DNA from: Thalia democratica
Lineage: Eukaryota
Length of the DNA: 64,000 nt
Direction: 5' to 3'
Assembly (NCBI GenBank): GCA_965202585.1
Contig: OZ241828.1
Location: 56,978,001 to 57,042,000 of the forward strand
In this document: positions 33,061 through 44,659 of the stretch, piece by piece
How the letters are laid out: every line of letters begins with the position of its first letter
Numbering within the stretch: the stretch's first letter is position 1
Notes under the pieces: model-generated
Database searches by the model: none
What the model saw: only the letters and a program-made list of their open reading frames with translations
Told to the model about the DNA's origin: nothing
Translations under genes and position numbers: made by a program

Positions 33061-33994
33061 GGAACGGGTCTAAATTGCACGAAGACAAAATTGCACGAGG
33101 TTACTAAATTGCACGAGGGGACTAAATTTCACGAGAACAAAATTGCACGAGTGCACAAAATTGCACAAAATCAAATTTATACAAAGCCAAATTTGCACGA
33201 GAGCACACATTTGCACGAGGGAACAAAATTGTACGAAGACGATTTTGCACCAAGGGTTAATTTTGCACGAATTACATTTTTGCACAAAAGTAAAAATTAC
33301 AGAATAAAAATAAAATTAAAAAAACAAAAAAATAATCAAAAAATAATTCAATTAAAAAAAAATTACTGGCCGAGGGTAAGGGTTAGAGGTATCAGTGATA
33401 GTAAAACAAAAATATTAAAAATAACTAATAAAAATACTATTATGGGAAGGTTTTTAAACGTATTTATATACCATTTGCAAATTAATATCAATAGATTATT
33501 CATTCTGTTTTTTATATTTTTTTGAAATGTATTTAAAATTTATCACTTGAGAATAAAACTTGTATGGTTTTGATAAGCTTTGTAAAATAAAATAAACAAA
33601 ACAAAATGAATAATCTATTGATATTAAGTTGCAAATGGTATATAAAATACTAATAAAAACTATAATAAAAAAAAATTCAATAAAAATTAAAAAGCTACCG
33701 ACCGAGGGTAAGAGTTAGAGGTAACAGTAATAGTAAAAATATAATATAAAATAATTAAAAAAATTATGTTAAAAAAAATAACAAATAAAGCAAAAGAAAA
33801 AAAGTTACCGACTAGGGTCTAGGGGTAACAGTGATAGTAAAAGAAAAAAAAAACTACTAAATTTAAATATGAAAAACATAACAATAATAAAAAAATTGTC
33901 TCCGAGCAAAATTGTCTGCTCATGCAAAAGTATCTTAGTGCAATTTTGTATGCTCGTGCAATTTTGTATGCTCGTGCAAATTAGACAGCTATCC
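33061..33994. mobile_element. Non-autonomous foldback/MULE-like MITE, 934 bp, 10-bp TSD
   Basis: Begins GGA and ends TCC; flanked by exact direct repeat AGTTCTATTG (33051-33060, 33995-34004). AAATTGCACGAG repeats at the left end are inverted (CTCGTGCAAT/AAA) at the right end. Superfamily inferred from TSD length and repeat-rich ends. Confidence 0.8.
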
Positions 33995-35114
33995 AGTTCT
34001 ATTGTATCCAGACATGACGTCTTTTTTACAAATAATTAGCGTAAACTTGTATTATATTTTTTAATGACTTTTTCTGAAGTTTTTCTTATAAAATTTAAAT
34101 AAAAATAATTACGGCTATTAATCAAAATCTTAAAATTTAATTTTTATCTGATTTTTTGTTTTAATTTTAAATTTTTAGACCATTGTCAAAAGTTTTTTTT
34201 TCATTGTAAATTTTTAAAGTTTTTAGTTATACATTACAAAATTATTCCATCCATTAAATTTATGAGTTTAAAACTTTATTTTTTGAAGTCTCTTTGAGTT
34301 TTTTTAGACTTTCTTGCATCGAAAAGGTTTGTTTGATTACTTATTATTTTACTTGCTTGCTAAGGGCGATTAAAAAGTAATAATTCAAGCAAAATAATGA
34401 GTTAAAACACTATTTTTGTACGTTTTTTTAACAAATTTTTTCTAAAGATTAATAATTTTGTATTATTGGACTACTGTGGTTGAATTATATGTTGTGTTTT
34501 TGAGCTCTAAAATTCACTGCGTTAATGCTCTATGCTCAAGCTGAATTCAACTTACAACAAAAAATATTCTATAGTTTCAACTTTGGGTTAATTTGTTGTT
34601 TATCAAAAAAAAAAATTGAAACTGAGATGACATGTTCAACTTTTGGAAGTGCAAAACAAAAAGTTCAAAACAAAAAGTGCAATATTTCATCATTTTACTC
34701 AAAGTGCAGAACAAAAAGTGCAGAATTACATTAGTCCACTCAAAGTGCAGAAGAAAAAGTGCAATATTTTATATGTTGCTAAAATCAAAGGTTAAAGTTA
34801 AAAAAATAAAAGAATTTAAAAGACTAATTTTAAAAAATGCTGAATCAGCAAATATCAGAGGAACTACGTTTCACTTAAAATCAGACCCGTTTAATCACAA
34901 AGAAAAACAAATTATGCAAAAAATAAAAATTCCTTGACAAGACGTTAAAAGGTATCCGTGATGAGCAACTCGATAACCTAAAAGTTTTTCGTGCACCAGG
35001 TCCTAGAATCAAAATTTTTTGTCGTTCAATAAACTATAACTTCAACATTATAGTTTTCAATACTATATAAAATTATTAAAGTACTTAATTATCAAGTTAA
35101 AATTTTAAACATAT

Positions 35115-36066
35115 ATGAGTATGACGTGAGGATTCTAGTAAATTTAAAACGAATATAATGTATTCATTTATGACGTCTAAATAAAAAAAAACTGTGCTTT
35201 CCGTAATGTTAACGCCAAAGTTACTCATTTAATCGAACTCATATTTCGTATACGTAATAAGTATGACGTAACGATTCTAGCAAATTTAAAATAAAAAAAA
35301 AATTGTTTATGACGTCACAATAAAAAAAACTGTGCTTTCCGTAATGTTTACGTCAAAGTTACTCGTTCAATCAAACCCAAATTTCGTATACGTAATCAGT
35401 ATGACAAAACGATTCTAGCAAACTTAAAATTAAAAAAAAAATTCATTTATGACGTCACAATAAAAAAAAACTGTGCTTTCCGTAATGTTTACGTCAAAGT
35501 TACTTGTTCAATCGAACCCAAATTTCGTATATGTAATAAGTATGACGTAACGATTCTAGCAAATTTAAAATTAAAAAATTTTTTTGTTTATGACGTCACA
35601 ATAAAAAAAAACTGTGCTTACCGTAATGTTTACGTCAAAGTTACTCGTTCAATCGAACCCAAATTTCGTATACGTAATCAGTATGACAAAACGATTCTAG
35701 CAAATTTAAAATTTAAAAAAAATATTCATTTATGACGTCACAATAAAAAAAAACTGTGCTTTATGTAATGTTTACGTCAAAGTTACTAGTTCAATCGAAC
35801 CCAAATTTTGTATACGTAATCAGTATGACGTAACGATTCAAGCAAATTTTAATTTTATTTTAAATGTTCATTTATGACTTCACAATAAAATAAACTGTGC
35901 TTTCCGTAATGTTTACGTCAAAGTTACTAGTTCAATCGAACTAAAATTTCGTATACGTAATAAGTATTACGTTACGATTCTAGCAAATTTAAACTTTATT
36001 TTAAATATTCATTTATGACTTCACTATAAAAAAAAAACTCTGCTTTCCGTAATGTTTACGTCAAAG
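35115..36066 (+). repeat. Tandem array, unit about 141 bp, about 6.7 copies (left arm)
   Basis: CTGTGCTT anchor at 35192, 35330, 35471, 35612, 35754, 35895 and (CTCTGC) 36038. Confidence 0.95.
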
Positions 36067-36390
36067 TTTATTAAAAAGAATTTGTAAACAGTACTGAAAA
36101 TAAAATTAAACTTTCGAAGTTTTTCCTTTGTTTGGCCTATTTATTAAAGATAGTAAGTGTAAAAACGTTTTATATTTAAAATTTATCTTTTTTCTCCCTG
36201 CTTTGTTTATAATACCTATAACAACAATTTTTAATGTTAACGTTTTGTTGCATCAGATTTTTTACAAATTTTAAATGTTGACCTTTGACATATCAAACTG
36301 TTTACAAACTGTTTTTATAAACAAAGTATTAATTGAAAAATTTGTTTTGGAAAATTATATTAACATAAATAATTCAAAAAACTTCAAAGA

Positions 36391-37419
36391 ATGCGTCCGA
36401 AGATAGATATTACCTTGGAAAACTTTTCAGAAACCTTAAAAGTCATTAATCAAACATCTTTTTTTACTATTTGGCAGTCTAGTCCAAAGGAAGCATCTGA
36501 GGTGTTTGTCAAGTTTGTACTTACTGGTTGGAGGAAGTTTAAGAAGGATAAGTTTCTTAAAGAAACTTACAAAGTGAGAAACTTTTTTATTAACAGGAAG
36601 ATTTCAAACGTAGAAGACTTGAGATTAAGTTATGGTCAAGTCCCGGAATATTCTTCGAGAGTTATGTTGGGATCTGAAAAGATTAAGGAAGTGAAATGCA
36701 ACTCTAGTGATAGTAAAAACCAAAACCAACCAATTGAAAGTGTATCCGGAGTTGGAACCTTCACTTGAACAAACCCTACATAATGTAAGTAACCTTTTAT
36801 TTTTATTTTATATTATTTATTACAGAAAGTTTAATAAACATATCTTAGGACAATGTACTAAATAAAGAAACTCAATGCTCGTCAATAAAAAAAGTAACAG
36901 CTAAAAAAAAACAAGCATTTGAAACTCTACCAGAAGAAAGTGAAGAAAATATACAGATTGGGAGGTAATATATATTTTTTAATTTTAAGTCATTATATTA
37001 AATCAAAATATAAATATTTTTTACTTACAGGACCAGCACATCCAAATACCCCTATGCATCTCCTTTCCCCATTTTGTTTTATATGTTGGGGCGAAGATGA
37101 GATGAATGAGGATGAAGAATCAGTAGAAATCGAATGGGTGCGTATATTATTTGATATACCTTACAAAAATTGCATTTTAAATTTATTTTCAACTTTTAAG
37201 AGCTATATACAGAGATCTATACTATATACAGATACTATATACTGAGATAACTTCAAAACGAAAACTAAAATAAGTTATTTAAAGTTTTTAACGTATGATA
37301 TTATAATATTTATTTAAGATACTATATTTCAGACGGATTGTTCTAGTTGTGCAAGATGGTTTCATAAAAGTTTAGCCAAACAAAAAAATAAGGATTTTTT
37401 TTGCGATTTATGTACTTGA
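36391..37419 (+). pseudogene. Intron-containing, degenerate PHD-finger-like cargo gene inside the foldback element
   Basis: Exons 37031-37137 and 37333-37419 join in phase 0 to give CFICWGEDEMNEDEESVEIEW|TDCSSCARWFHKSLAKQKNKDFFCDLCT* (C4HC3 spacing, one Cys replaced by Leu). Upstream pieces (ORF 36391-36768; donor GTAAGT near 36785; exon about 36826-36963) need a frameshift and a stop read-through to join. Confidence 0.6.
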
Positions 37420-37831
37420 TTTAATTTTTATTCAAATTAAGCATAAATTTAAATTAAGCTTACATTAAAAGTTATTGTTAAAATTGTTATTTTTTTGATT
37501 TTCAACTACTTCATTCAATATTGCATCATTTTGACACTTATTTTGTCGTGCAGTTATTTTCAAGTTTTGTTTAAACATTTTTCATTTTCTCAACATTTTT
37601 CATATACATAAATACCATTTTTAGTTTAAAAAGTTCATTAATTGTTTGTTCGTAATTCATTATATAATGAAGAGCGGTTAATTGTTATTCTTTTTTAATT
37701 CCAAATTGAAAAAACTCGTTCATATATCATTCATTTTGCATTAATATAATATTTCGTTTAATAAAAAAAGCGTTTAGTTATTGTGATATTATTATGTTTA
37801 CTATTGTGATATTGTTAAGCTGTTTATTTAT

Positions 37832-38800
37832 AGTGACGTCATAAATGAATTTTCTTTTAAATTTTAATTTTGCTAGAATTGTTACGTCATACTGATTACG
37901 TATACGAATTTTGGGTTCGATTGAACGAGTAACTTTGACGTAAACATTACGGAAAGCACAGTTTTTTTTATTGTGACGTCATAAATGAATATTTTTTTTT
38001 AATTTTAAATTTGATAGAATCGTTACGTCATACTGATTACGTATACGAAATTTGGGTTCGATTGAACTAGTAACTTTGACGTAAACATTACGGAAAGCAC
38101 AGTTTTTTTTATTGTGACGTCATAAATGAATATTTTTTTTTAATTTTAAATTTGCTAGAATCGTTACGTCATACTGATTACGTATACGAAATTTGGGTTC
38201 GATTGAACTAGTAACTTTGACGTAAACATTACGGAAAGCACAGTTTTTTTATTTTGACGTCATAAATGATTTTTTTTTTTAATTTTAAATTTGCTAGAAT
38301 CGTTACGTCATACTTATTACGTATACGAAATTTGGGTTCGATTGAACTAGTAACTTTGACGTAAACTTTACGGAAAGCACAGCTTTTTTTATTGTGACGT
38401 CATAAATGAATATTTTTTTTTAATTTTAAATTTGCTAGAATCGTTACGTCATACTTATTACGTATACGAAATTTGGGTTCGATTGAACTAGTAACTTTGA
38501 CGTAAACATTACGGAAAGCACAGTTTTTTTTATTGTGACGTCATAAATGAATATTTTTTTTTAATTTTAAATTTGCTAGAATCGTAACGTCATACTGATT
38601 ACGTATACGAAATTTGGGTTCGATTGAACTAGTAACTTTGACGTAAACATTACGGAAAGCACAGTTTTTCTTATTGTGATGTCATAAATGAATATTTTTT
38701 TTTAATTTTGAAATTGCTATAATCGTTACGTCATACTGATTACGTATACGAAATTTAGGTTCGATTGAAGGAGTAACTTTGACGTAAACATTACGGAAAG
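37832..38800 (-). repeat. Tandem array, same 141-bp unit in reverse orientation, about 6.9 copies (right arm)
   Basis: GCACAG anchor at 37956, 38097, 38238, 38377, 38518, 38659; reverse complement of the left-arm unit. Confidence 0.95.
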
Positions 38801-40891
38801 TAAATTTTGAACTTTTTTGTTTTGCACTGCGAGAAGTTTTACATCTGAGATGACTATACATGCAAAAACTTGTACCAAATATTGTATACAATAACACATA
38901 TTGTTAGAAGAAAAATGTGACTCACAACTAAGGTCAATGGATTGGTGTGGAGAAAGACCTTTCGGTCATCGAGCTGCACAATATTTACTTGTAACTAATA
39001 CTTTGAGCTTACTTTAAAACAATAATGAAAAAATAAAAGCTGAAAAAGTAACTATATATACATTAATTTTTTTTTAAGTTTAAAAATAGGAAGCACCCTA
39101 TTTTAACCCATTACTGCCAATATTGACCATAGAAACCATGGGCTTCCACACCGTCTCCTCCCCTAGATTTCAATTTTTATGATCATGTACATACACATTT
39201 TTCTTGTTGCCCTCTCAACAAGAGCAACCACAAAAAATGCAACAAATATCTCAAAATTGAATAAATGGGGAGCGTTAGTAATATTAGTATACATAAAATA
39301 ATTAGTAATGTCATAAAACTGAAAGAGGGCCATGTATTTTAAAATAGTGTCTTTAAATTTCTAGTATATGTGTTTGCAGGTAAATGAAAATTAGAGCAAA
39401 AATAAAACTGTTTTACTGATTTGTAAACAATTCAGTTTTTGTCAATAAAATCTAGCACTAATAATTGATTGAATTTGTTTAAACTACTCAAAATAAAGTC
39501 ACTCTTAACACTAAACAGCTAAATTTTAAAAATAAATAATAAAAATTAACAGATATTCTGAAAAAAATAAAGTAATAATAAAAGTATTTTAATTTAGTTA
39601 AATAAACTATTTTTAAACCTCAAACTAATTTTTAACAAATAAAATAAATAACCTGAATGTCTAAAAAATATCAAGTTTTACACTTAAGTTTAAAATCTTT
39701 ATATTCTGAAACAAATGAACATTTAATATCTAGTAGACAAAAAATTACAAAATAGAATTAATAAAGAAAAATAACACATCTACTTGTATCAATGAAAGGT
39801 TCTATCAATTCTATCAATGAAGACAAAAGAAGACTATTAAATTTTATATACAAGAAACAAATTAAAAAAGTTTATATAATAAATAAAATAATAAAACCAT
39901 CCTACACCAATCCAGCTCTACTTACATCCAGTTTATGAGACCAATAGCAATCAGCCCAAAACAGTACAAACACCAATACAAAGATATAAGTTTAACTATT
40001 GGTAAAGATTAGGCTTGATATTTTTCTAATTGTCTTTAACAACAATCTTAAGGGCATAGAGGGGGGTTGAACACCCTTTTTTGGTTTTTGATCCTATTTT
40101 ATATAGTTTTTACTAAGCTACAAGATGCTTTTTACAAATTTGAAAGATTCAAAATGATTTTTGAGATATACAGGGTTGCCACACACTCAGGGAACTCAGG
40201 GAATCTCAGGGAATTTTCAAACTGTAGAAAATCTCAGGGAACCTCAGGGAAACTCAGGGAATTTTGGCATTTTTCTTTTAACTCAGGGAAACTCAGGGGA
40301 AGTTTTGATTTTTTCTCTAAATTTCAGGGAAGTTTTTGAAAATCTCAGGGAAATTTTTTTCTAGATCTAGAATGAGGTTTAATTAATCCAGATTCAATAT
40401 TTTGTTCAAAATTAGTAATTTTTATTATTTAAGTGGTTATTTAGAATTTTTTAGCCTTGCGGCTAGTTCTTAAATATTCTTAGTATTAAAATTGTAGTTT
40501 TTTTAATTTAAAATTTATATTAACTTAAGTAAAATCAAACAGTTTAGAGAAATGAAAGTTGTTGTTAACTATTCATTGAAAAGTTCTAATAAACTTTTTA
40601 TTTTTAGTTACTTATGTAGTTTAAAAAACACTATGTTGTACTATTAGTTCTTATTTTTTAAATAATAAAGTTATTTGTTATTTGTTTACAACTACTTGTT
40701 TTCAGTAAAAAAAATTAAAATGAATACAGATTAGTGTTGTATTACTTTTGTTAAAAAAATAGAGGTTAAATTTTTGTTTATAAATAATAATTTCAAAAGT
40801 AGTAGCAGTAATGGTAACTAATTTTTTATTAATGTTTTAATATACTTCACAACTTTTTTGTAGATTTAATTTTAAAGCTTTTTTAAGTATT

Positions 40892-42810
40892 ATGAGTAAA
40901 GTACAGTAACCTCTCGCTTATTTACGCACATTGTGTCCACAGAAAAACTGCGTAAAGATACGAGAGATCGTAAAGATGATAGGTATTAAATTTACTTACT
41001 ATAATGGCTGTTTTTTGATATAGCTTCTAGTTAAAAGCAGACTGGTACTTTACTACTTTTAACAATTTTTTCACTTAATTTATTAATATGAAAACAAAAG
41101 ATAAAACTATACATCTATCAAAAAAAGGATTTTAATTTATATAAAGTGATAATACTTGTAAAATTATTTAATTAATTTTAATAAGTATATTTTATCTTAA
41201 TGTTTATTTACATGTGACTTTTTTGATACTTAACATTTATATTCTATTGTACATAGCAAATTCTATTTATAATTAAGCTTTTGTTTACAACTAAGAAATG
41301 GTGTGATGTTTATATTAAAATCTGTTTCTATAGTCTTTTACAAAAATATGCATTTGGTGCTGTAATGGATTTCTTCTTCTGAACAAAAATATGTAAAATA
41401 TAAGAAAAATGTTTATGCTACTATAACTTTGCTAATTTTGCCCACATAAGGATAAACTTAAATTTGATCTCCTATTGTTAACAAAATTTCTAATATACTT
41501 ATGTATAACTAAATGTTCATTAACGAGTCAAGGACATAAGTTAACAAAATATAAAGATATAGAGAGGTAAGTTAGCATTAAAAAACATACTTTAAATTAA
41601 AAATATACAATAAACCTAATTTAAGCAATACTAGAATAAATTAAAATTTTTATTTTTCAAACTTTAAGAATTCTAAAATGCGTAACTAAACGAGATTGCG
41701 TAACGTCATGAGTGCGTTAAGATGCGAGAGGTTACTGTACAGATTATAACCTTGTTTAAAAAAAGTTGGCTTAACCATGAAGACTTCAAAGATTGGTTAC
41801 TTGAGGATGTAGACAAAGAGAAGTTTAAATGTAATTGGTGTGGTGATGATACACCAATGGCCTTATCCAACATGGGTATAAGGGCATTGAAATCGCACAG
41901 TATGTTGAAAACATCTTAAATTGAAAGCCTCTAAGAGTAAAAATAATGCAATTACTTCTTATTTTGGTGGGGCTAATAGTTCAACTAGTATATCAGCTGC
42001 AACTTCTTCAACAGCTGCTGAAATTTATTGGGCTCTCAAGTGTACCAAAAAAACTGGTCAGGAAACTCTTGCGATAATAATAACACTTTATTCACTACCA
42101 TGTTTCCTGATAGTGAAATTGCAAAAAAGTTCTGCATGAATAGAACCAAATATTCATATATAACAAACTTTGGTATAGCCCCTTTTTTTAAAGATGTCTT
42201 AAAAAAAACAATTTTGTGCTCGTCTTTTTATTCCATTTCATTTGATGAGTGTTTCAATAAAGTCTTGCAAAAAACTCAACTAGATTTGGTGGTGAGATGC
42301 ATGAAGAAAAAAAAAGTACGCTGTCAATATTTTACATCAGCATTTTTAGGTCACTGTACTGTAGATAATTTAAATAAAGCCCTATTGACCGAAATTCAAG
42401 AGTTAAACCTAAAAAATTTGATCCAAATTTCAATGGATGGACCAAATGTGAACGTTGCTCTTGCAAAAAAAGTTGACTTTGATAGAGAGGCGTCAGGTCT
42501 ACCTCAACTTAATAACACAGGGTCCTGCAGCTTGCACAAAATTCATGGTGCATTCAAGTCCGGTGTTGAAGCTACACCTTGGAAAATAAAAAATGTTTTA
42601 AAACATTTCCATTGCTTATTTGATCACATATCGGCCAGAAGAGATGACTATGTAACTGAAACTGGGACAACCACCTTTCCTTTATCATTTTGCGCCACAA
42701 GATGGTTAGAGTCAAAGCAGGTAGCTGACAGAGCCATTTTAATTTGGCCTAATGTTGTTAAAAAGGTACAGTACTGGAAAAAACTGCCTGGTTACAAACC
42801 TTTTAAGATT
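40892..42810 (+). pseudogene. hAT transposase remnant
   Basis: Reconstructed start MSKV|QIITLFKKSWL split by a MITE. BED-like zinc finger CNWC...H, then MFPDSEIAK, FDE (first catalytic Asp), MDGPNVN (second Asp), CSLH (CxxH) and TRW. Frameshifts near 41910 and 42050; C-terminal catalytic Glu and dimerisation region absent. Confidence 0.88.
40904..41737. mobile_element. Tc1/mariner-pogo-type MITE, 834 bp, TA target duplication
   Basis: TA|CAGTAACCTCTCGCTTATTTACGCAC ... GTGCGTTAAGATGCGAGAGGTTACTG|TA; about 26-bp imperfect TIRs beginning CAGT. Its removal restores the transposase frame. Confidence 0.85.
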
Positions 42811-44659
42811 GAGTTTTTGAAAACAGTTTTTTTTATAAATTTAATGCATAAGCATACACATATAACCTTCCTTTTATTATTAAAGAAGAAAAATGAGAAT
42901 GAGGTATTAATAATTTGTGTTAGAAGAGAAATTTTTTTTTTAAGATTTGAAAAATACTCAGGGAAACTCAGGGAAATTTAAGGTTACTCAGGGAAATTTT
43001 TGGTCACTCAGGGAAGATTTTTTGGCTCAAAGAGTGGCAACCCTGGATATAGCCGGTCAAAGTCGGAAGCAACAATAGGTTCCTTATGGAAAGCGCAAAC
43101 TAAAATGGCAGAAATAGACTATTTCACTAAAAATCTATCTCCTCCTACGTTTTTTGAGATAACTACCTCAAATTTTCAGGAAATGTTCCTTGATATTTTT
43201 TAAAAATTCTGTCGAAACAGATTTTATATAAAAATTAAACAAAAAAAACAGTTTTTTTTTAGTTTTTTTGTTATAAAATTTTTAGTATTAAGTTTATAAA
43301 ATTCTGTTCGGACAGAATTTTCTAAATACATCAAGGAACATTTCCTGAAAGTTTGAGAAAGTTATCTCAAAAAACGTAGGAGGAGATAGATTTTTAGTGA
43401 TTTCTAGTTATTTACCATTTTAGTTTGCGCCTCCCATAAGGATCCTATTGTTGCCTCCGACTTTGACCGGCTATATATCAAAAATTATTTTGAATTTTTA
43501 TAATCTGTTAAAAGCGTTTTGTAGATTAGTAAAAACTATATAAAATAAGATCAAAACCCAAAAAAGGGTGTTTACCCCCCTATGCCCTTAATTCTAATTG
43601 GTAACTTGTTGAACAATACTAATCATAACAGTAAAAGTATACTATCTTAAGGTCATTAAAAATGAATAGTGAATAAAAATTAATGAAGTTTAGCAATATA
43701 ATGTTTAAGTTTTATTAGTTTATGATAAATAAGTCTCCTTATATTTATGTATTTATGAAATATAAATTTTAGCCTAAAACTTTTGTTAAAAAAGATATCA
43801 AATATAGTATAATTTCAGCTTGATATTGGTGTGACATCATCCTAGGTATTTACCATTAGTTTATGACAAATAAAAACAATTAAATTAAATGTTTAATAAA
43901 AAAAATGAATTAAAAAATAATAATTGAATTTTCTTTATCTATAGAATTCAATTTTGAGAAAATATTCCTTTATCTGTATTTTAACTCTGTATCTACTTAT
44001 AAAAAAAAATTATTGACCAAAACTTTCAAAAACCCCTGTTTTTTTTAATGAAGCCTTTTTCTTAAAACTACAATAGTGATTGTATTTTCTAATAAACTAA
44101 TTATAAAAAATCAAGTTTGAAAACTTCCATAATATAGTTTTAAAATGATGAAAATTTTAATTAATATTGTGCTTTTAGATTACATCTTCCTTATGGAACC
44201 TGTTTTGGTCATAAATTTCGATACCTTATACCTCAAAAGCTACCTGTATTTTTGTTAAACTGTTAAGTATCTAGTAGCTAAGACAAAAACTTACAAAATA
44301 AGACCAACTTATATAAAATATAACGGATTACCTCTGGTCTTAATGCAAATAAAAAAGTTAAAATATATAATATTTTTGTATATAATGTTTTGAATGAAAA
44401 AATATTAAGTTGAACTTAATTTTGTAAAAAAATGTAAACTGCAGTACAGTAAAAAATGGACTTCAGTTTTTATTATTCTTTTTAGTATTGACTGTTTATT
44501 GTAGTTACTAGAAAAACTTGATTTACAGCATAAGTTATTACAATTTTTTATCTCATTTATGTTTAAAAGAAAAACTACTATAATACTTAGATCAAGAATT
44601 TTATCCCTCATCTCATTATTGACATTACACAAAAAAAAAATATACTATAACATTCAATT

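What the first reader, a model, noticed from the sequence alone, without database searches (positions are those of the whole stretch)
34632..38844. Foldback element with about 1-kb inverted satellite arms, unusual ATGT...ACAT ends and a 10-bp TSD
Seen: exact TSD CTGAGATGAC, short imperfect outer TIRs, an asymmetric about 440-bp left spacer, then about 7 x 141-bp units facing about 7 inverted units around a 1.8-kb gene-bearing core. Established: foldback architecture with tandem-repeat TIRs and 9-11-bp TSDs occurs in Mutator-like elements, which usually begin with G. Inference: possibly an undescribed MULE-like family that disperses a satellite and a chromatin-reader cargo. The arms could also form a kilobase hairpin producing dsRNA or genome instability.
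Basis: partly seen in the sequence, partly recalled or inferred. Interest (0 to 1): 0.7.

Follow-up and report, generated by a model that had tools for sequence, protein, structure and literature searches.

The report
Decayed foldback DNA transposon copy
This is one broken, non-autonomous copy of a low-copy "foldback" jumping gene of the long-known Mutator/Foldback kind. Its supposed cargo gene is the fused leftover of the element's own gene, so the find is real but ordinary.

Summary
Window 34632-38844 is a 4,213-bp element flanked by an exact 10-bp duplication (CTGAGATGAC). It has ~40-bp imperfect ATGT...ACAT inverted ends and 6.7 and 7.0 inverted 141-bp units around a 1.75-kb core.

It belongs to a real transposon family. 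I found about 16 left ends and 23 right ends in this 802-Mb genome. Twelve copies with both ends range from 182 bp to 10.2 kb, and 10 of them have perfect 9- or 10-bp duplications at different sites.

The "PHD cargo gene" is not cargo. The copies form a nested internal-deletion series of one longer element, and the window copy joins a 5' remnant to a 3' remnant at about 36940-36955. The frames do not connect, exon 1 carries a frameshift, and one PHD cysteine is lost.

No copy keeps a catalytic domain. Assignment to the Mutator superfamily (Foldback/Rehavkus-like: 9-bp TSD, tandem repeats in long inverted ends, PHD finger) therefore rests on duplication length and architecture, not on transposase homology.

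An unrelated autonomous OTU-MULE transposon is nested in some copies.

Earlier notes of this scan describe other foldback Mutator-type families on other DNA of this genome. Verdict: new member of a known kind, with low to moderate interest.

The parts
34622..34631 (.). Left copy of the 10-bp target-site duplication CTGAGATGAC
   Evidence: Read directly. Identical to 38845-38854. Other copies have different 9-10-bp duplications at the same termini.
34632..34671 (+). Left terminal inverted repeat (~40 bp, starts ATGTTCAACTTTTGGAAGTGCAAAAC)
   Evidence: The first 45 bases shown are identical in 6 of the 11 other complete copies (c02, c03, c04, c06, c07 and the window); the other six differ by one or a few substitutions, and c05 and c11 diverge after about position 30.
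34647..34769 (+). Subterminal direct repeats (14 bp x2.6 and 41 bp x2.7) carrying AAAAAGTGCA motifs; candidate transposase-binding sites. The right end has no such repeat block (only one one-mismatch AAAAAGTTCA there).
   Evidence: The binding role is inferred.
34770..35117 (+). Left spacer. 34918-35042 is a piece of an unrelated, very high-copy ~125-145-bp repeat that entered the family ancestor.
   Evidence: dozens of other genomic matches at 79-91% to query 290-410. (contig word depth about 80,000 against about 130-350 in unique flank)..
35118..36068 (+). Left arm: 6.7 units of the 141-bp repeat (88% matches)
   Evidence: Unit counts vary from 2 to 12 in left arms of other copies.
36069..37822 (+). 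Core: a deletion chimera that joins a 5' remnant (to about 36955) and a 3' remnant (from about 36940) of a longer ancestral interior
   Evidence: c06 and c10 continue 289 bp beyond 36955. c05 continues 2.3 kb upstream of 36940.
36391..36794 (+). Remnant of first coding exon (M...PELEPSLEQ.LHN in intact copies, GT donor at 36795). The window copy has a 1-bp frameshift near its 3' end, so its ORF stops at 36768.
37031..37137 (+). Exon with the first half of a PHD finger (..CFIC..; AG acceptor at 37029-30, GT donor at 37138)
37333..37419 (+). Last exon with the second half of the PHD finger and the stop codon. The window reads ..CSSCARWFHKSL..FFCDLCT*, with the sixth zinc ligand Cys replaced by Leu. 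Four copies (c02, c03, c08, c09) keep the Cys and read through to the stop; c05 and c10 also keep it but are frameshifted just afterwards, and c04 reads Phe.
   Evidence: Pfam PHD E 0.017 for the window exon and 0.0015-0.002 for the intact exon of c02 and c08.
37823..38800 (-). Right arm: 7.0 inverted units of the 141-bp repeat (95% matches, with a 421-bp higher-order period)
38801..38844 (-). Right terminal inverted repeat (reverse complement starts ATGTAAAACTTCTCGCAGTGCAAAAC)
   Evidence: 23 matches to the last 64 bp in the genome.
38845..38854 (.). Right copy of the target-site duplication CTGAGATGAC

Best explanation
Window 34632-38844 is one internally deleted, non-autonomous and already decaying copy of a low-copy foldback-type cut-and-paste DNA transposon.

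Proposed mechanism: a DDE transposase supplied in trans bound the ~40-bp inverted ends and probably the subterminal AAAAAGTGCA repeats. It excised the element and inserted it with a 9-10-bp staggered cut, which on repair gave the flanking duplication. That stagger, together with the long inverted ends built of tandem repeats, places the family with Mutator-superfamily foldback elements (Foldback, Tetris, Tm1, Rehavkus).

The coding pieces in the core are the two ends of the element's own multi-exon gene. The C-terminal PHD finger matches the Rehavkus-type transposase layout. They are not a captured host gene.

The 141-bp arrays are part of the long inverted ends and change in unit number by slippage or unequal exchange.

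Shown here: mobility, duplication length, family structure, the deletion series, and the decay of the coding pieces. Inferred: the transposase superfamily, the binding sites, and trans-mobilisation. No copy with a catalytic domain was found, so the family is probably extinct or dependent on an unidentified relative.
For: - Family size: about 16 left ends and 23 right ends.
- Twelve copies with both ends, 182 bp to 10,195 bp. Ten have perfect duplications, five of 10 bp and five of 9 bp, all with different sequences.
- One copy (c07, 2,128 bp) is a pure foldback without a core, and one (c36) is a 182-bp MITE.
- Nested breakpoints. The 5' part is longest in c06 and c10 (1,175 bp). A 1.9-kb middle part is found only in c04 and c05. 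The 3' part starts at five different points in c05, c08/c09, c02, the window and c10.
- All open frames of these parts lie on the + strand.
- The exon-1 protein occurs only inside family copies, apart from three 43-49% loci.
- Decay differs between copies: frameshifts, a stop codon, and Cys to Leu or Phe in the PHD finger.
- The PHD finger is C4HC3 in intact copies; Pfam PHD E 0.0015 on the 28-aa last exon alone.
- The middle part has a conserved RTWAP..PLWTA..NNQ[short intron]ESWFG..K block. The nearest Pfam-named Atlas clusters are MULE, SWIM and Transposase_mut, at scores of 0.83-0.85 (lead only; alignment).
- Literature: Rehavkus has a 9-bp TSD, TIRs of 26-400 bp, a PHD finger and a minisatellite (PMC6446971), and is described as foldback transposons with subterminal tandem repeats (PMC12581902). 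Tetris and Tm1 are foldback elements with 8-10-bp TSDs assigned to Mutator (PMC4079207, PMC3169594).
Against: - No catalytic DDE region survives in any copy I could read, so the superfamily is not shown by homology.
- Pfam finds no MULE domain in the family's remnants.
- A profile comparison of the 93-aa remnant with a bona fide MULE profile from the same genome was negative.
- The whole-library HMMER search found only five short unannotated proteins.
- The distant kin of the remnant in this genome are not among the PF10551 or PF00872 matches.
- The ends begin with A, not G.
- Half of the duplications are 10 bp rather than the 9 bp given for Rehavkus.
- That the PHD-bearing ORF was a transposase is inferred from co-linearity, not demonstrated.
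Confidence: 0.72

Rival explanations
1. Pack-MULE-like capture: the element picked up a host PHD-finger gene as cargo and spreads it.
For: The window copy has no transposase, and it has a recognisable PHD finger with plausible GT-AG introns. Three 43-49% exon-1-like loci lie at C2:85.43-85.51 Mb outside known copies.
Against: - The coding pieces belong to a co-linear nested deletion series together with 1.9 kb of further coding-like sequence.
- In the window the gene is a deletion chimera with a phase mismatch.
- The pieces decay independently in different copies.
- No high-identity donor gene exists in the genome.
- PHD fingers are native to Rehavkus-type transposases (PMC6446971).
Confidence: 0.1
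2. It is a foldback element of another superfamily (for example P-like, as Galileo is) that happens to make 9-10-bp duplications.
For: The conserved ..Q..ESWFG..K block resembles, from my memory only, the QD.LENFFG..R block of P/THAP9 transposases at least as well as it does the N..ES.N...K block of MULEs. The MULE profile comparison was negative. Foldback shape is known to arise in several superfamilies (PMC4079207).
Against: - Published P-superfamily foldback elements make 7-8-bp duplications; here there are ten of 9-10 bp.
- Pfam P-transposase C-terminal model PF21789 has no match in the genome at E 0.01, nor on the remnant or its relatives.
- The Atlas's nearest named clusters are Mutator-type.
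Confidence: 0.13
3. The family is a non-autonomous partner of the OTU-MULE family ('B') found nested in some copies, and is moved by that transposase.
For: B has intact 930-aa ORFs in the genome and makes 9-10-bp duplications. It is present or leaves end fragments in c06, c08, c09, c10 and c11, and close to two further right ends. Both termini share ACTTTT at positions 8-13.
Against: - The ends and subterminal repeats are otherwise unrelated: ATGTTCAAC.. with AAAAAGTGCA, against GGGTAGGAC.. with TATTTTATGGG.
- B in c06 is a classical nested insertion with its own 130-bp inverted ends and a 9-bp duplication, GTTCGATTG.
- Only 4 of 694 B ends abut the 141-bp unit.
- The family has remnants of its own, unrelated gene; tblastn with the B transposase found nothing.
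Confidence: 0.05

Closest known systems
Rehavkus DNA transposons (Mutator-related; Repbase; Tribolium, Helobdella)
   Same: Long inverted ends that hold variable numbers of subterminal tandem repeats (foldback shape). A 9-bp class target duplication. One gene ending in or containing a PHD finger. The repeat is carried around the genome by transposition (PMC6446971, PMC12581902).
   Different: No transposase homology could be tested. Half of the duplications are 10 bp. According to the 2019 survey, Rehavkus is reported only from arthropods and annelids. The gene here has introns. Earlier notes of this scan, which I did not verify, call the host a planktonic tunicate.
Tetris (Drosophila virilis foldback element)
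   Same: Non-autonomous foldback element. Arms with tandem repeats a few hundred bp or less in unit length. 8-10-bp duplications. No autonomous copy found. Assigned to Mutator on duplication length alone (PMC4079207).
   Different: Tetris repeats have expanded into a free satellite. Here the 141-bp unit was seen only inside elements, and depth suggests tens to a few hundred units in all. Tetris has no coding remnants.
Tm1 (Meloidogyne Mutator/Foldback family)
   Same: Composite inverted ends with variable numbers of tandem repeats. Mostly 9-bp (8-10) duplications without a target consensus. MITE-like and longer forms in one family (PMC3169594).
   Different: Tm1 repeats are 14 bp, and its transposase is Phantom-type with a FLYWCH finger and no PHD. 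Tm1's end motif CCTACCC matches the nested B family here, not the ATGT family.
Drosophila Foldback (FB/NOF) elements
   Same: Long inverted arms made of tandem repeats. 9-bp duplications. Many copies lack any coding core (my own knowledge; also cited in PMC4079207).
   Different: FB arms are built of short (10-31 bp) repeats that run almost to the tips. Here a unique ~40-bp end and, on the left, a ~490-bp non-repeated stretch precede the arrays.
Galileo (P-superfamily foldback element)
   Same: Kilobase inverted ends with internal tandem repeats that hold extra transposase-binding sites (PMC4079207 citing Marzo et al.).
   Different: 7-bp duplications and a THAP-domain P transposase. Neither was found here.

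Membership tests
Mutator superfamily (MULE sensu lato) | Target-site duplication of 8-11 bp, mostly 9 | tested here: met
   Ten of 12 complete copies have perfect duplications, five of 9 bp and five of 10 bp.
Mutator superfamily (MULE sensu lato) | Terminal inverted repeats, often long | tested here: met
   ~40-bp imperfect ends plus ~1-kb inverted arms.
Mutator superfamily (MULE sensu lato) | DDE transposase with MULE/IS256-type catalytic domain (PF10551/PF00872) | tested here: inconclusive
   No family copy keeps the region of the first two catalytic residues. The remnants give no Pfam hit, hhalign to a MULE profile is negative, and Atlas leads to MULE/SWIM/Transposase_mut are weak.
Rehavkus | 9-bp duplication | tested here: inconclusive
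   9 bp in five copies and 10 bp in five, including the window.
Rehavkus | [quoted passage not shown] | tested here: met
   141-bp arrays of 2-14 units per arm in the copies. Definition from PMC12581902 and PMC6446971.
Rehavkus | PHD finger in the transposase | tested here: inconclusive
   A C4HC3 PHD finger ends the family's relic ORF. That this ORF was the transposase is inferred from co-linearity.
Rehavkus | Transposase groups with Rehavkus reference sequences | not testable with these tools
   No Repbase or Dfam library is on hand, and the catalytic part is missing from all copies read.
Pack-MULE (gene-capturing MULE) | Internal fragment derived from a host gene that exists elsewhere as the donor | tested here: not met
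   The exon-1 protein is found at 76% identity or more only inside family copies; the only others are three 43-49% loci.
P superfamily foldback (Galileo-like) | 7-8-bp duplication and P/THAP9-type transposase | tested here: not met
   Duplications are 9-10 bp. PF21789 has no match in the genome at E 0.01 and none on the remnants.
MULE-Ulp1-PHD foldback families noted earlier in this genome | Ulp1 (Peptidase_C48) domain next to the PHD finger | tested here: not met
   No C48 hit on the remnants. None of 62 genomic C48 matches lies in a family copy.

The most novel reading that the evidence does not exclude
The family is a chordate branch of Rehavkus-like PHD-finger transposons, a group so far reported only from arthropods and annelids. 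In addition, a sub-lineage of it moved as a 10-kb composite that carried a complete, unrelated OTU-MULE autonomous transposon as a passenger. Alternatively, that OTU-MULE specifically targets the GTTCGATTG site of the 141-bp unit.
Probability: 0.2. Interest if true: 0.45.

Novelty: new member of a known kind. Interest (0 to 1): 0.3.

Why it matters
- It adds a well-delimited family to the catalogue of foldback transposons whose inverted ends carry a satellite-like repeat, which is a documented route by which satellites are seeded and dispersed.
- For annotation, the spliced 'PHD-finger gene' in this window should not be called a host gene or functional cargo. It is a deletion chimera of transposon gene ends.
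- If the Rehavkus link were confirmed, it would widen the host range of that small group.
- The nested, apparently intact OTU-MULE family is the more promising object for work on active transposition in this genome.

Tried and rejected
- Fetching the remaining copies. The minus-strand copies were pieced together from two loci with small gaps written as N.
- Pfam on every coding remnant, exon by exon: only OTU and MULE for the nested B element, and weak PHD for the last exon.
- Word search and the whole-library HMMER search with the 93-aa remnant: only six short unannotated proteins in all (P0001-P0006).
- hhalign of that small profile against a MULE profile, and hmmsearch against PDB sequences: nothing.
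- Weak DUF5575_C hits on two relatives (E 0.012 and 0.1). I rejected them because the family has no match in the genome and no literature.
- Genome scans for PF10551, PF00872, PF02902 and PF21789, to see whether the remnant's distant kin (for example the 1,324-aa open frame at C8:20944691) carry a known domain: no overlap.
- AlphaFold on exon 1 without an alignment: pLDDT 49, unusable, so no fold search was run. The Atlas hint of a tyrosine-recombinase-like N-domain was treated as chance.
- Rfam on 33700-39700: no RNA family.
- Public runs: only Logan contigs and no RNA run, so expression, small RNAs and empty alleles could not be settled.
- The joined (spliced) protein model was deliberately not built or searched. 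All searches were exon by exon.
Full report
**Observation**

- CTGAGATGAC lies at 34622-34631 and again at 38845-38854, directly outside ATGT (34632) and ACAT (38844).
- The two ends are imperfect inverted repeats over about 40 bp.
- Tandem Repeats Finder gives a 141-bp array of 6.7 units at 35118-36068 (88% matches) and an inverted one of 7.0 units at 37823-38800 (95%).
- The arms pair at 85-96% over stretches of up to 295 nt.
- The left end also has 14-bp and 41-bp subterminal repeats (34647-34769) with three exact AAAAAGTGCA motifs, followed by a ~350-bp spacer.
- The right arm runs straight into the terminal repeat.

**A real, mobile family**

The window lies at C4:56,978,001-57,042,000 of an 802-Mb, roughly 27% G+C assembly. 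Earlier notes of this scan call the organism a planktonic tunicate. I did not verify that, but marine-metagenome contigs do hold pieces of the element.

The left 486 bp finds about 16 places with the terminus. The last 64 bp finds 23. I assembled 12 copies with both ends from the fetched loci.
- Lengths: 182, 2,128, 2,644, 3,757, 4,213 (the window), 5,298, 5,464, 6,381, 6,410, 7,141, 8,083 and 10,195 bp.
- Ten have perfect direct repeats exactly at the termini, five of 10 bp and five of 9 bp. All differ in sequence and show no consensus.
- Two copies (c04 and the 182-bp c36) have none.
- One copy (c11) is only about 80% identical, so at least two subfamilies exist.
- Identity to the window copy runs from 79% to 97%.
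- Arms hold 2-12 units on the left and 3-14 on the right. Units are about 92% alike within an element and about 90% alike between elements. Right arms are always the more homogeneous.

**The core is not cargo**

Pairwise comparison of the cores gives a nested deletion series.
- All copies share the first ~125 bp inside the left arm.
- The 5' part runs furthest in c06 and c10 (1,175 bp).
- A 1.9-kb middle part exists only in c04 and c05.
- The 3' part begins at five different points, in c05, c08/c09, c02, the window and c10.
- In the window the 5' remnant ends at about 36955 and the 3' remnant begins at about 36940, a 16-bp overlap.

That junction lies inside the exon at 36849-36964 of the apparent gene model. 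Read from the sequence, that exon ends in phase 2, whereas the next exon (37031-37137) needs phase 1. The model therefore does not stay in frame.

The window's first exon also has a 1-bp insertion relative to c03, c06 and c10, which read ...ESVPELEPSLEQ.LHN before a GT donor.

The last two exons encode a PHD finger split by a GT-AG intron. In c02, c03, c08 and c09 the second half reads CSSCA.WFHKSC...FFCDLC through to the stop, which with CFIC in the previous exon gives C4HC3. The window has Leu and c04 has Phe at the sixth ligand. c05 and c10 keep that Cys but are frameshifted just afterwards. c08 and c09 have frameshifts in exon 1, and c06 has a stop codon.

Pfam PHD scores E 0.0015-0.002 on the 28-residue last exon of the intact copies. 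The exon-1 protein is found at 76% identity or more only inside family copies. The only other matches are three 43-49% loci at C2:85.43-85.51 Mb.

All open frames of the three parts lie on the same strand. The simplest reading is a single multi-exon gene of the element itself. Each copy keeps different ends of it.

Every protein search was done exon by exon.

**Which transposase?**

The middle part (c04/c05) has a 93-aa open frame with a conserved block RTWAP..PLWTA..NNQ, then an in-frame short intron, then ESWFG..K. Spliced relatives in the protein libraries read NNQSIESWFGALK and TTNQTSEAWFSVLK. This looks like the region of the third catalytic residue of a DDE transposase. It could not be assigned:
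- Pfam gives nothing.
- The word search gives one near-identical fragment.
- The whole-library HMMER search gives five short unannotated proteins.
- A profile comparison with a true MULE profile is negative.
- PDB sequences give nothing.
- The protein-language-model Atlas puts MULE, SWIM and Transposase_mut clusters nearest among named ones, at 0.83-0.85, which is a lead only.
- In the genome this frame has just the two close copies. More distant kin reach 37-48% identity, including a 1,324-aa open frame at C8:20944691. I could not read these, and they do not coincide with PF10551, PF00872, PF02902 or PF21789 matches.

No copy keeps the first two catalytic residues. The superfamily therefore rests on architecture and on the 9-10-bp duplication. 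In the literature that length is used to place foldback elements such as Tetris (8-10 bp) and Tm1 (8-10, mostly 9) in Mutator (PMC4079207, PMC3169594).

Rehavkus is a Mutator-related group. It is described with a 9-bp TSD, TIRs of 26-400 bp, one ORF, a PHD finger and a minisatellite (PMC6446971), and as foldback transposons with variable subterminal tandem repeats in Tribolium (PMC12581902). It is the closest published match in layout.

**Nested second family**

Copy c06 (contig C20) holds a 6.1-kb insert in its right arm.
- It has its own 130-bp inverted ends (GGGTAGGAC...) and is flanked by the 9-bp repeat GTTCGATTG of the 141-bp unit.
- It encodes an OTU protease domain (PF02338, E 1e-9) and a Mutator transposase.
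- Three other loci have an uninterrupted 930-aa frame. That frame scores over the curated cut-offs for PF10551 and PF00872.
- Its relatives in the protein library carry PF10551 and PF00872.
- The genome has 694 exact copies of its end motif.

Its transposase shows no similarity to the ATGT-family remnants. End fragments of this family abut the same position of the 141-bp unit in c06, c08, c09 and c10, and c11 has one in inverted form. Two further ATGT right ends have such an end 86-140 bp away. One ancestral insertion carried along by later transposition of the host element explains this most simply. A target preference is not excluded.

**Mechanism and status**

Shown: cut-and-paste-type insertions with 9-10-bp duplications, internal deletions, change in array length, and decay of the coding pieces.

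Inferred:
- a Mutator-type DDE enzyme binding the ends and the subterminal repeats;
- deletion derivatives arising by interrupted gap repair;
- present inactivity, because no intact gene was found.

The arms could form a ~950-bp hairpin at about 90% pairing. With no RNA run and only short contigs, dsRNA or instability could not be tested. A contig of run X1 crosses the left junction without a difference. One of run X3 stops at 34625 with 55 unplaced bases, which might be an empty allele.

**Comparison and verdict**

This is a new family of a known kind. Earlier notes of this scan, which I did not check, report other foldback Mutator-type families on other DNA of this genome, some with Ulp1-PHD genes. 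My C48 test shows that this family is not of that type. Interest is low to moderate.

Noticed in passing
L025:2170-8308 (- strand; contig C20:127107-133245); intact copies at C2:17676144, C5:20630613 and C1:103582552 (L038, L041 and L043 hold the last 669 codons): An autonomous-looking Mutator transposon family with a single 930-aa ORF that fuses an OTU cysteine protease to a MULE/Transposase_mut domain. It has 130-bp inverted ends starting GGGTAGGAC, its own subterminal satellite, and 694 exact end motifs in the genome. The end 7-mer CCTACCC equals motif A2 of the nematode Tm1 family (PMC3169594).
   Followed up: partly
c06, c08, c09, c10 (C20:127096, C9:56640466, C5:24171092, C2:101329814) and L030:2596-3603: Ends of that OTU-MULE family abut the same site (GTTCGATTG) of the 141-bp unit in five ATGT-family copies. 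They also lie 86-140 bp from two further ATGT right ends (C1:607k, C1:58476k). Only 4 of 694 ends genome-wide show the junction. Either one inherited insertion was moved as a composite, or there is a target preference.
   Followed up: partly
window 34918-35042; also 33800-33993 and 38921-39230: Very high-copy short repeats: contig word depth is 70,000-300,000, against about 130-350 for unique flank. The one inside the element's left spacer is a ~125-145-bp unit that occurs as inverted pairs elsewhere (L017).
   Followed up: partly
window 35310-35740 and 37834-38543: Nearly every 141-bp unit carries a perfect TGACGTCA palindrome (a CRE/bZIP-type site) plus further ACGT-core half sites. Ten of the 12 TGACGTCA in the 64-kb window lie in the arms, against 0.38 expected for the whole window. 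The copies are related by descent, so this is a property of the unit, not independent enrichment.
   Followed up: no
G000:C8:20944691-20944846 (-): A 1,324-aa open frame with 40% identity to residues 5-56 of the family's 93-aa remnant. It may be an intact or domesticated relative of the lost transposase. It could not be fetched.
   Followed up: no
G000:C2:85427110, 85438622, 85505620: Three clustered loci with 43-49% identity to the family's first-exon protein. They may be a related element family or a host gene cluster.
   Followed up: no
window 33066-33240: An 18/34/52-bp tandem array (AAATTGCACGAG...) 1.4 kb upstream of the element. It is reminiscent of the subterminal repeats of another transposon.
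   Followed up: no
window 42028-42981 (+): A 317-aa open frame with no Pfam match at E 0.01. It lies in repeat-rich DNA downstream of the element.
   Followed up: partly
window 34625 (run X3, record 9): A 734-nt contig of a second sample matches the left flank up to 34625 and then has 55 unplaced bases. This could be an allele without the insertion.
   Followed up: no
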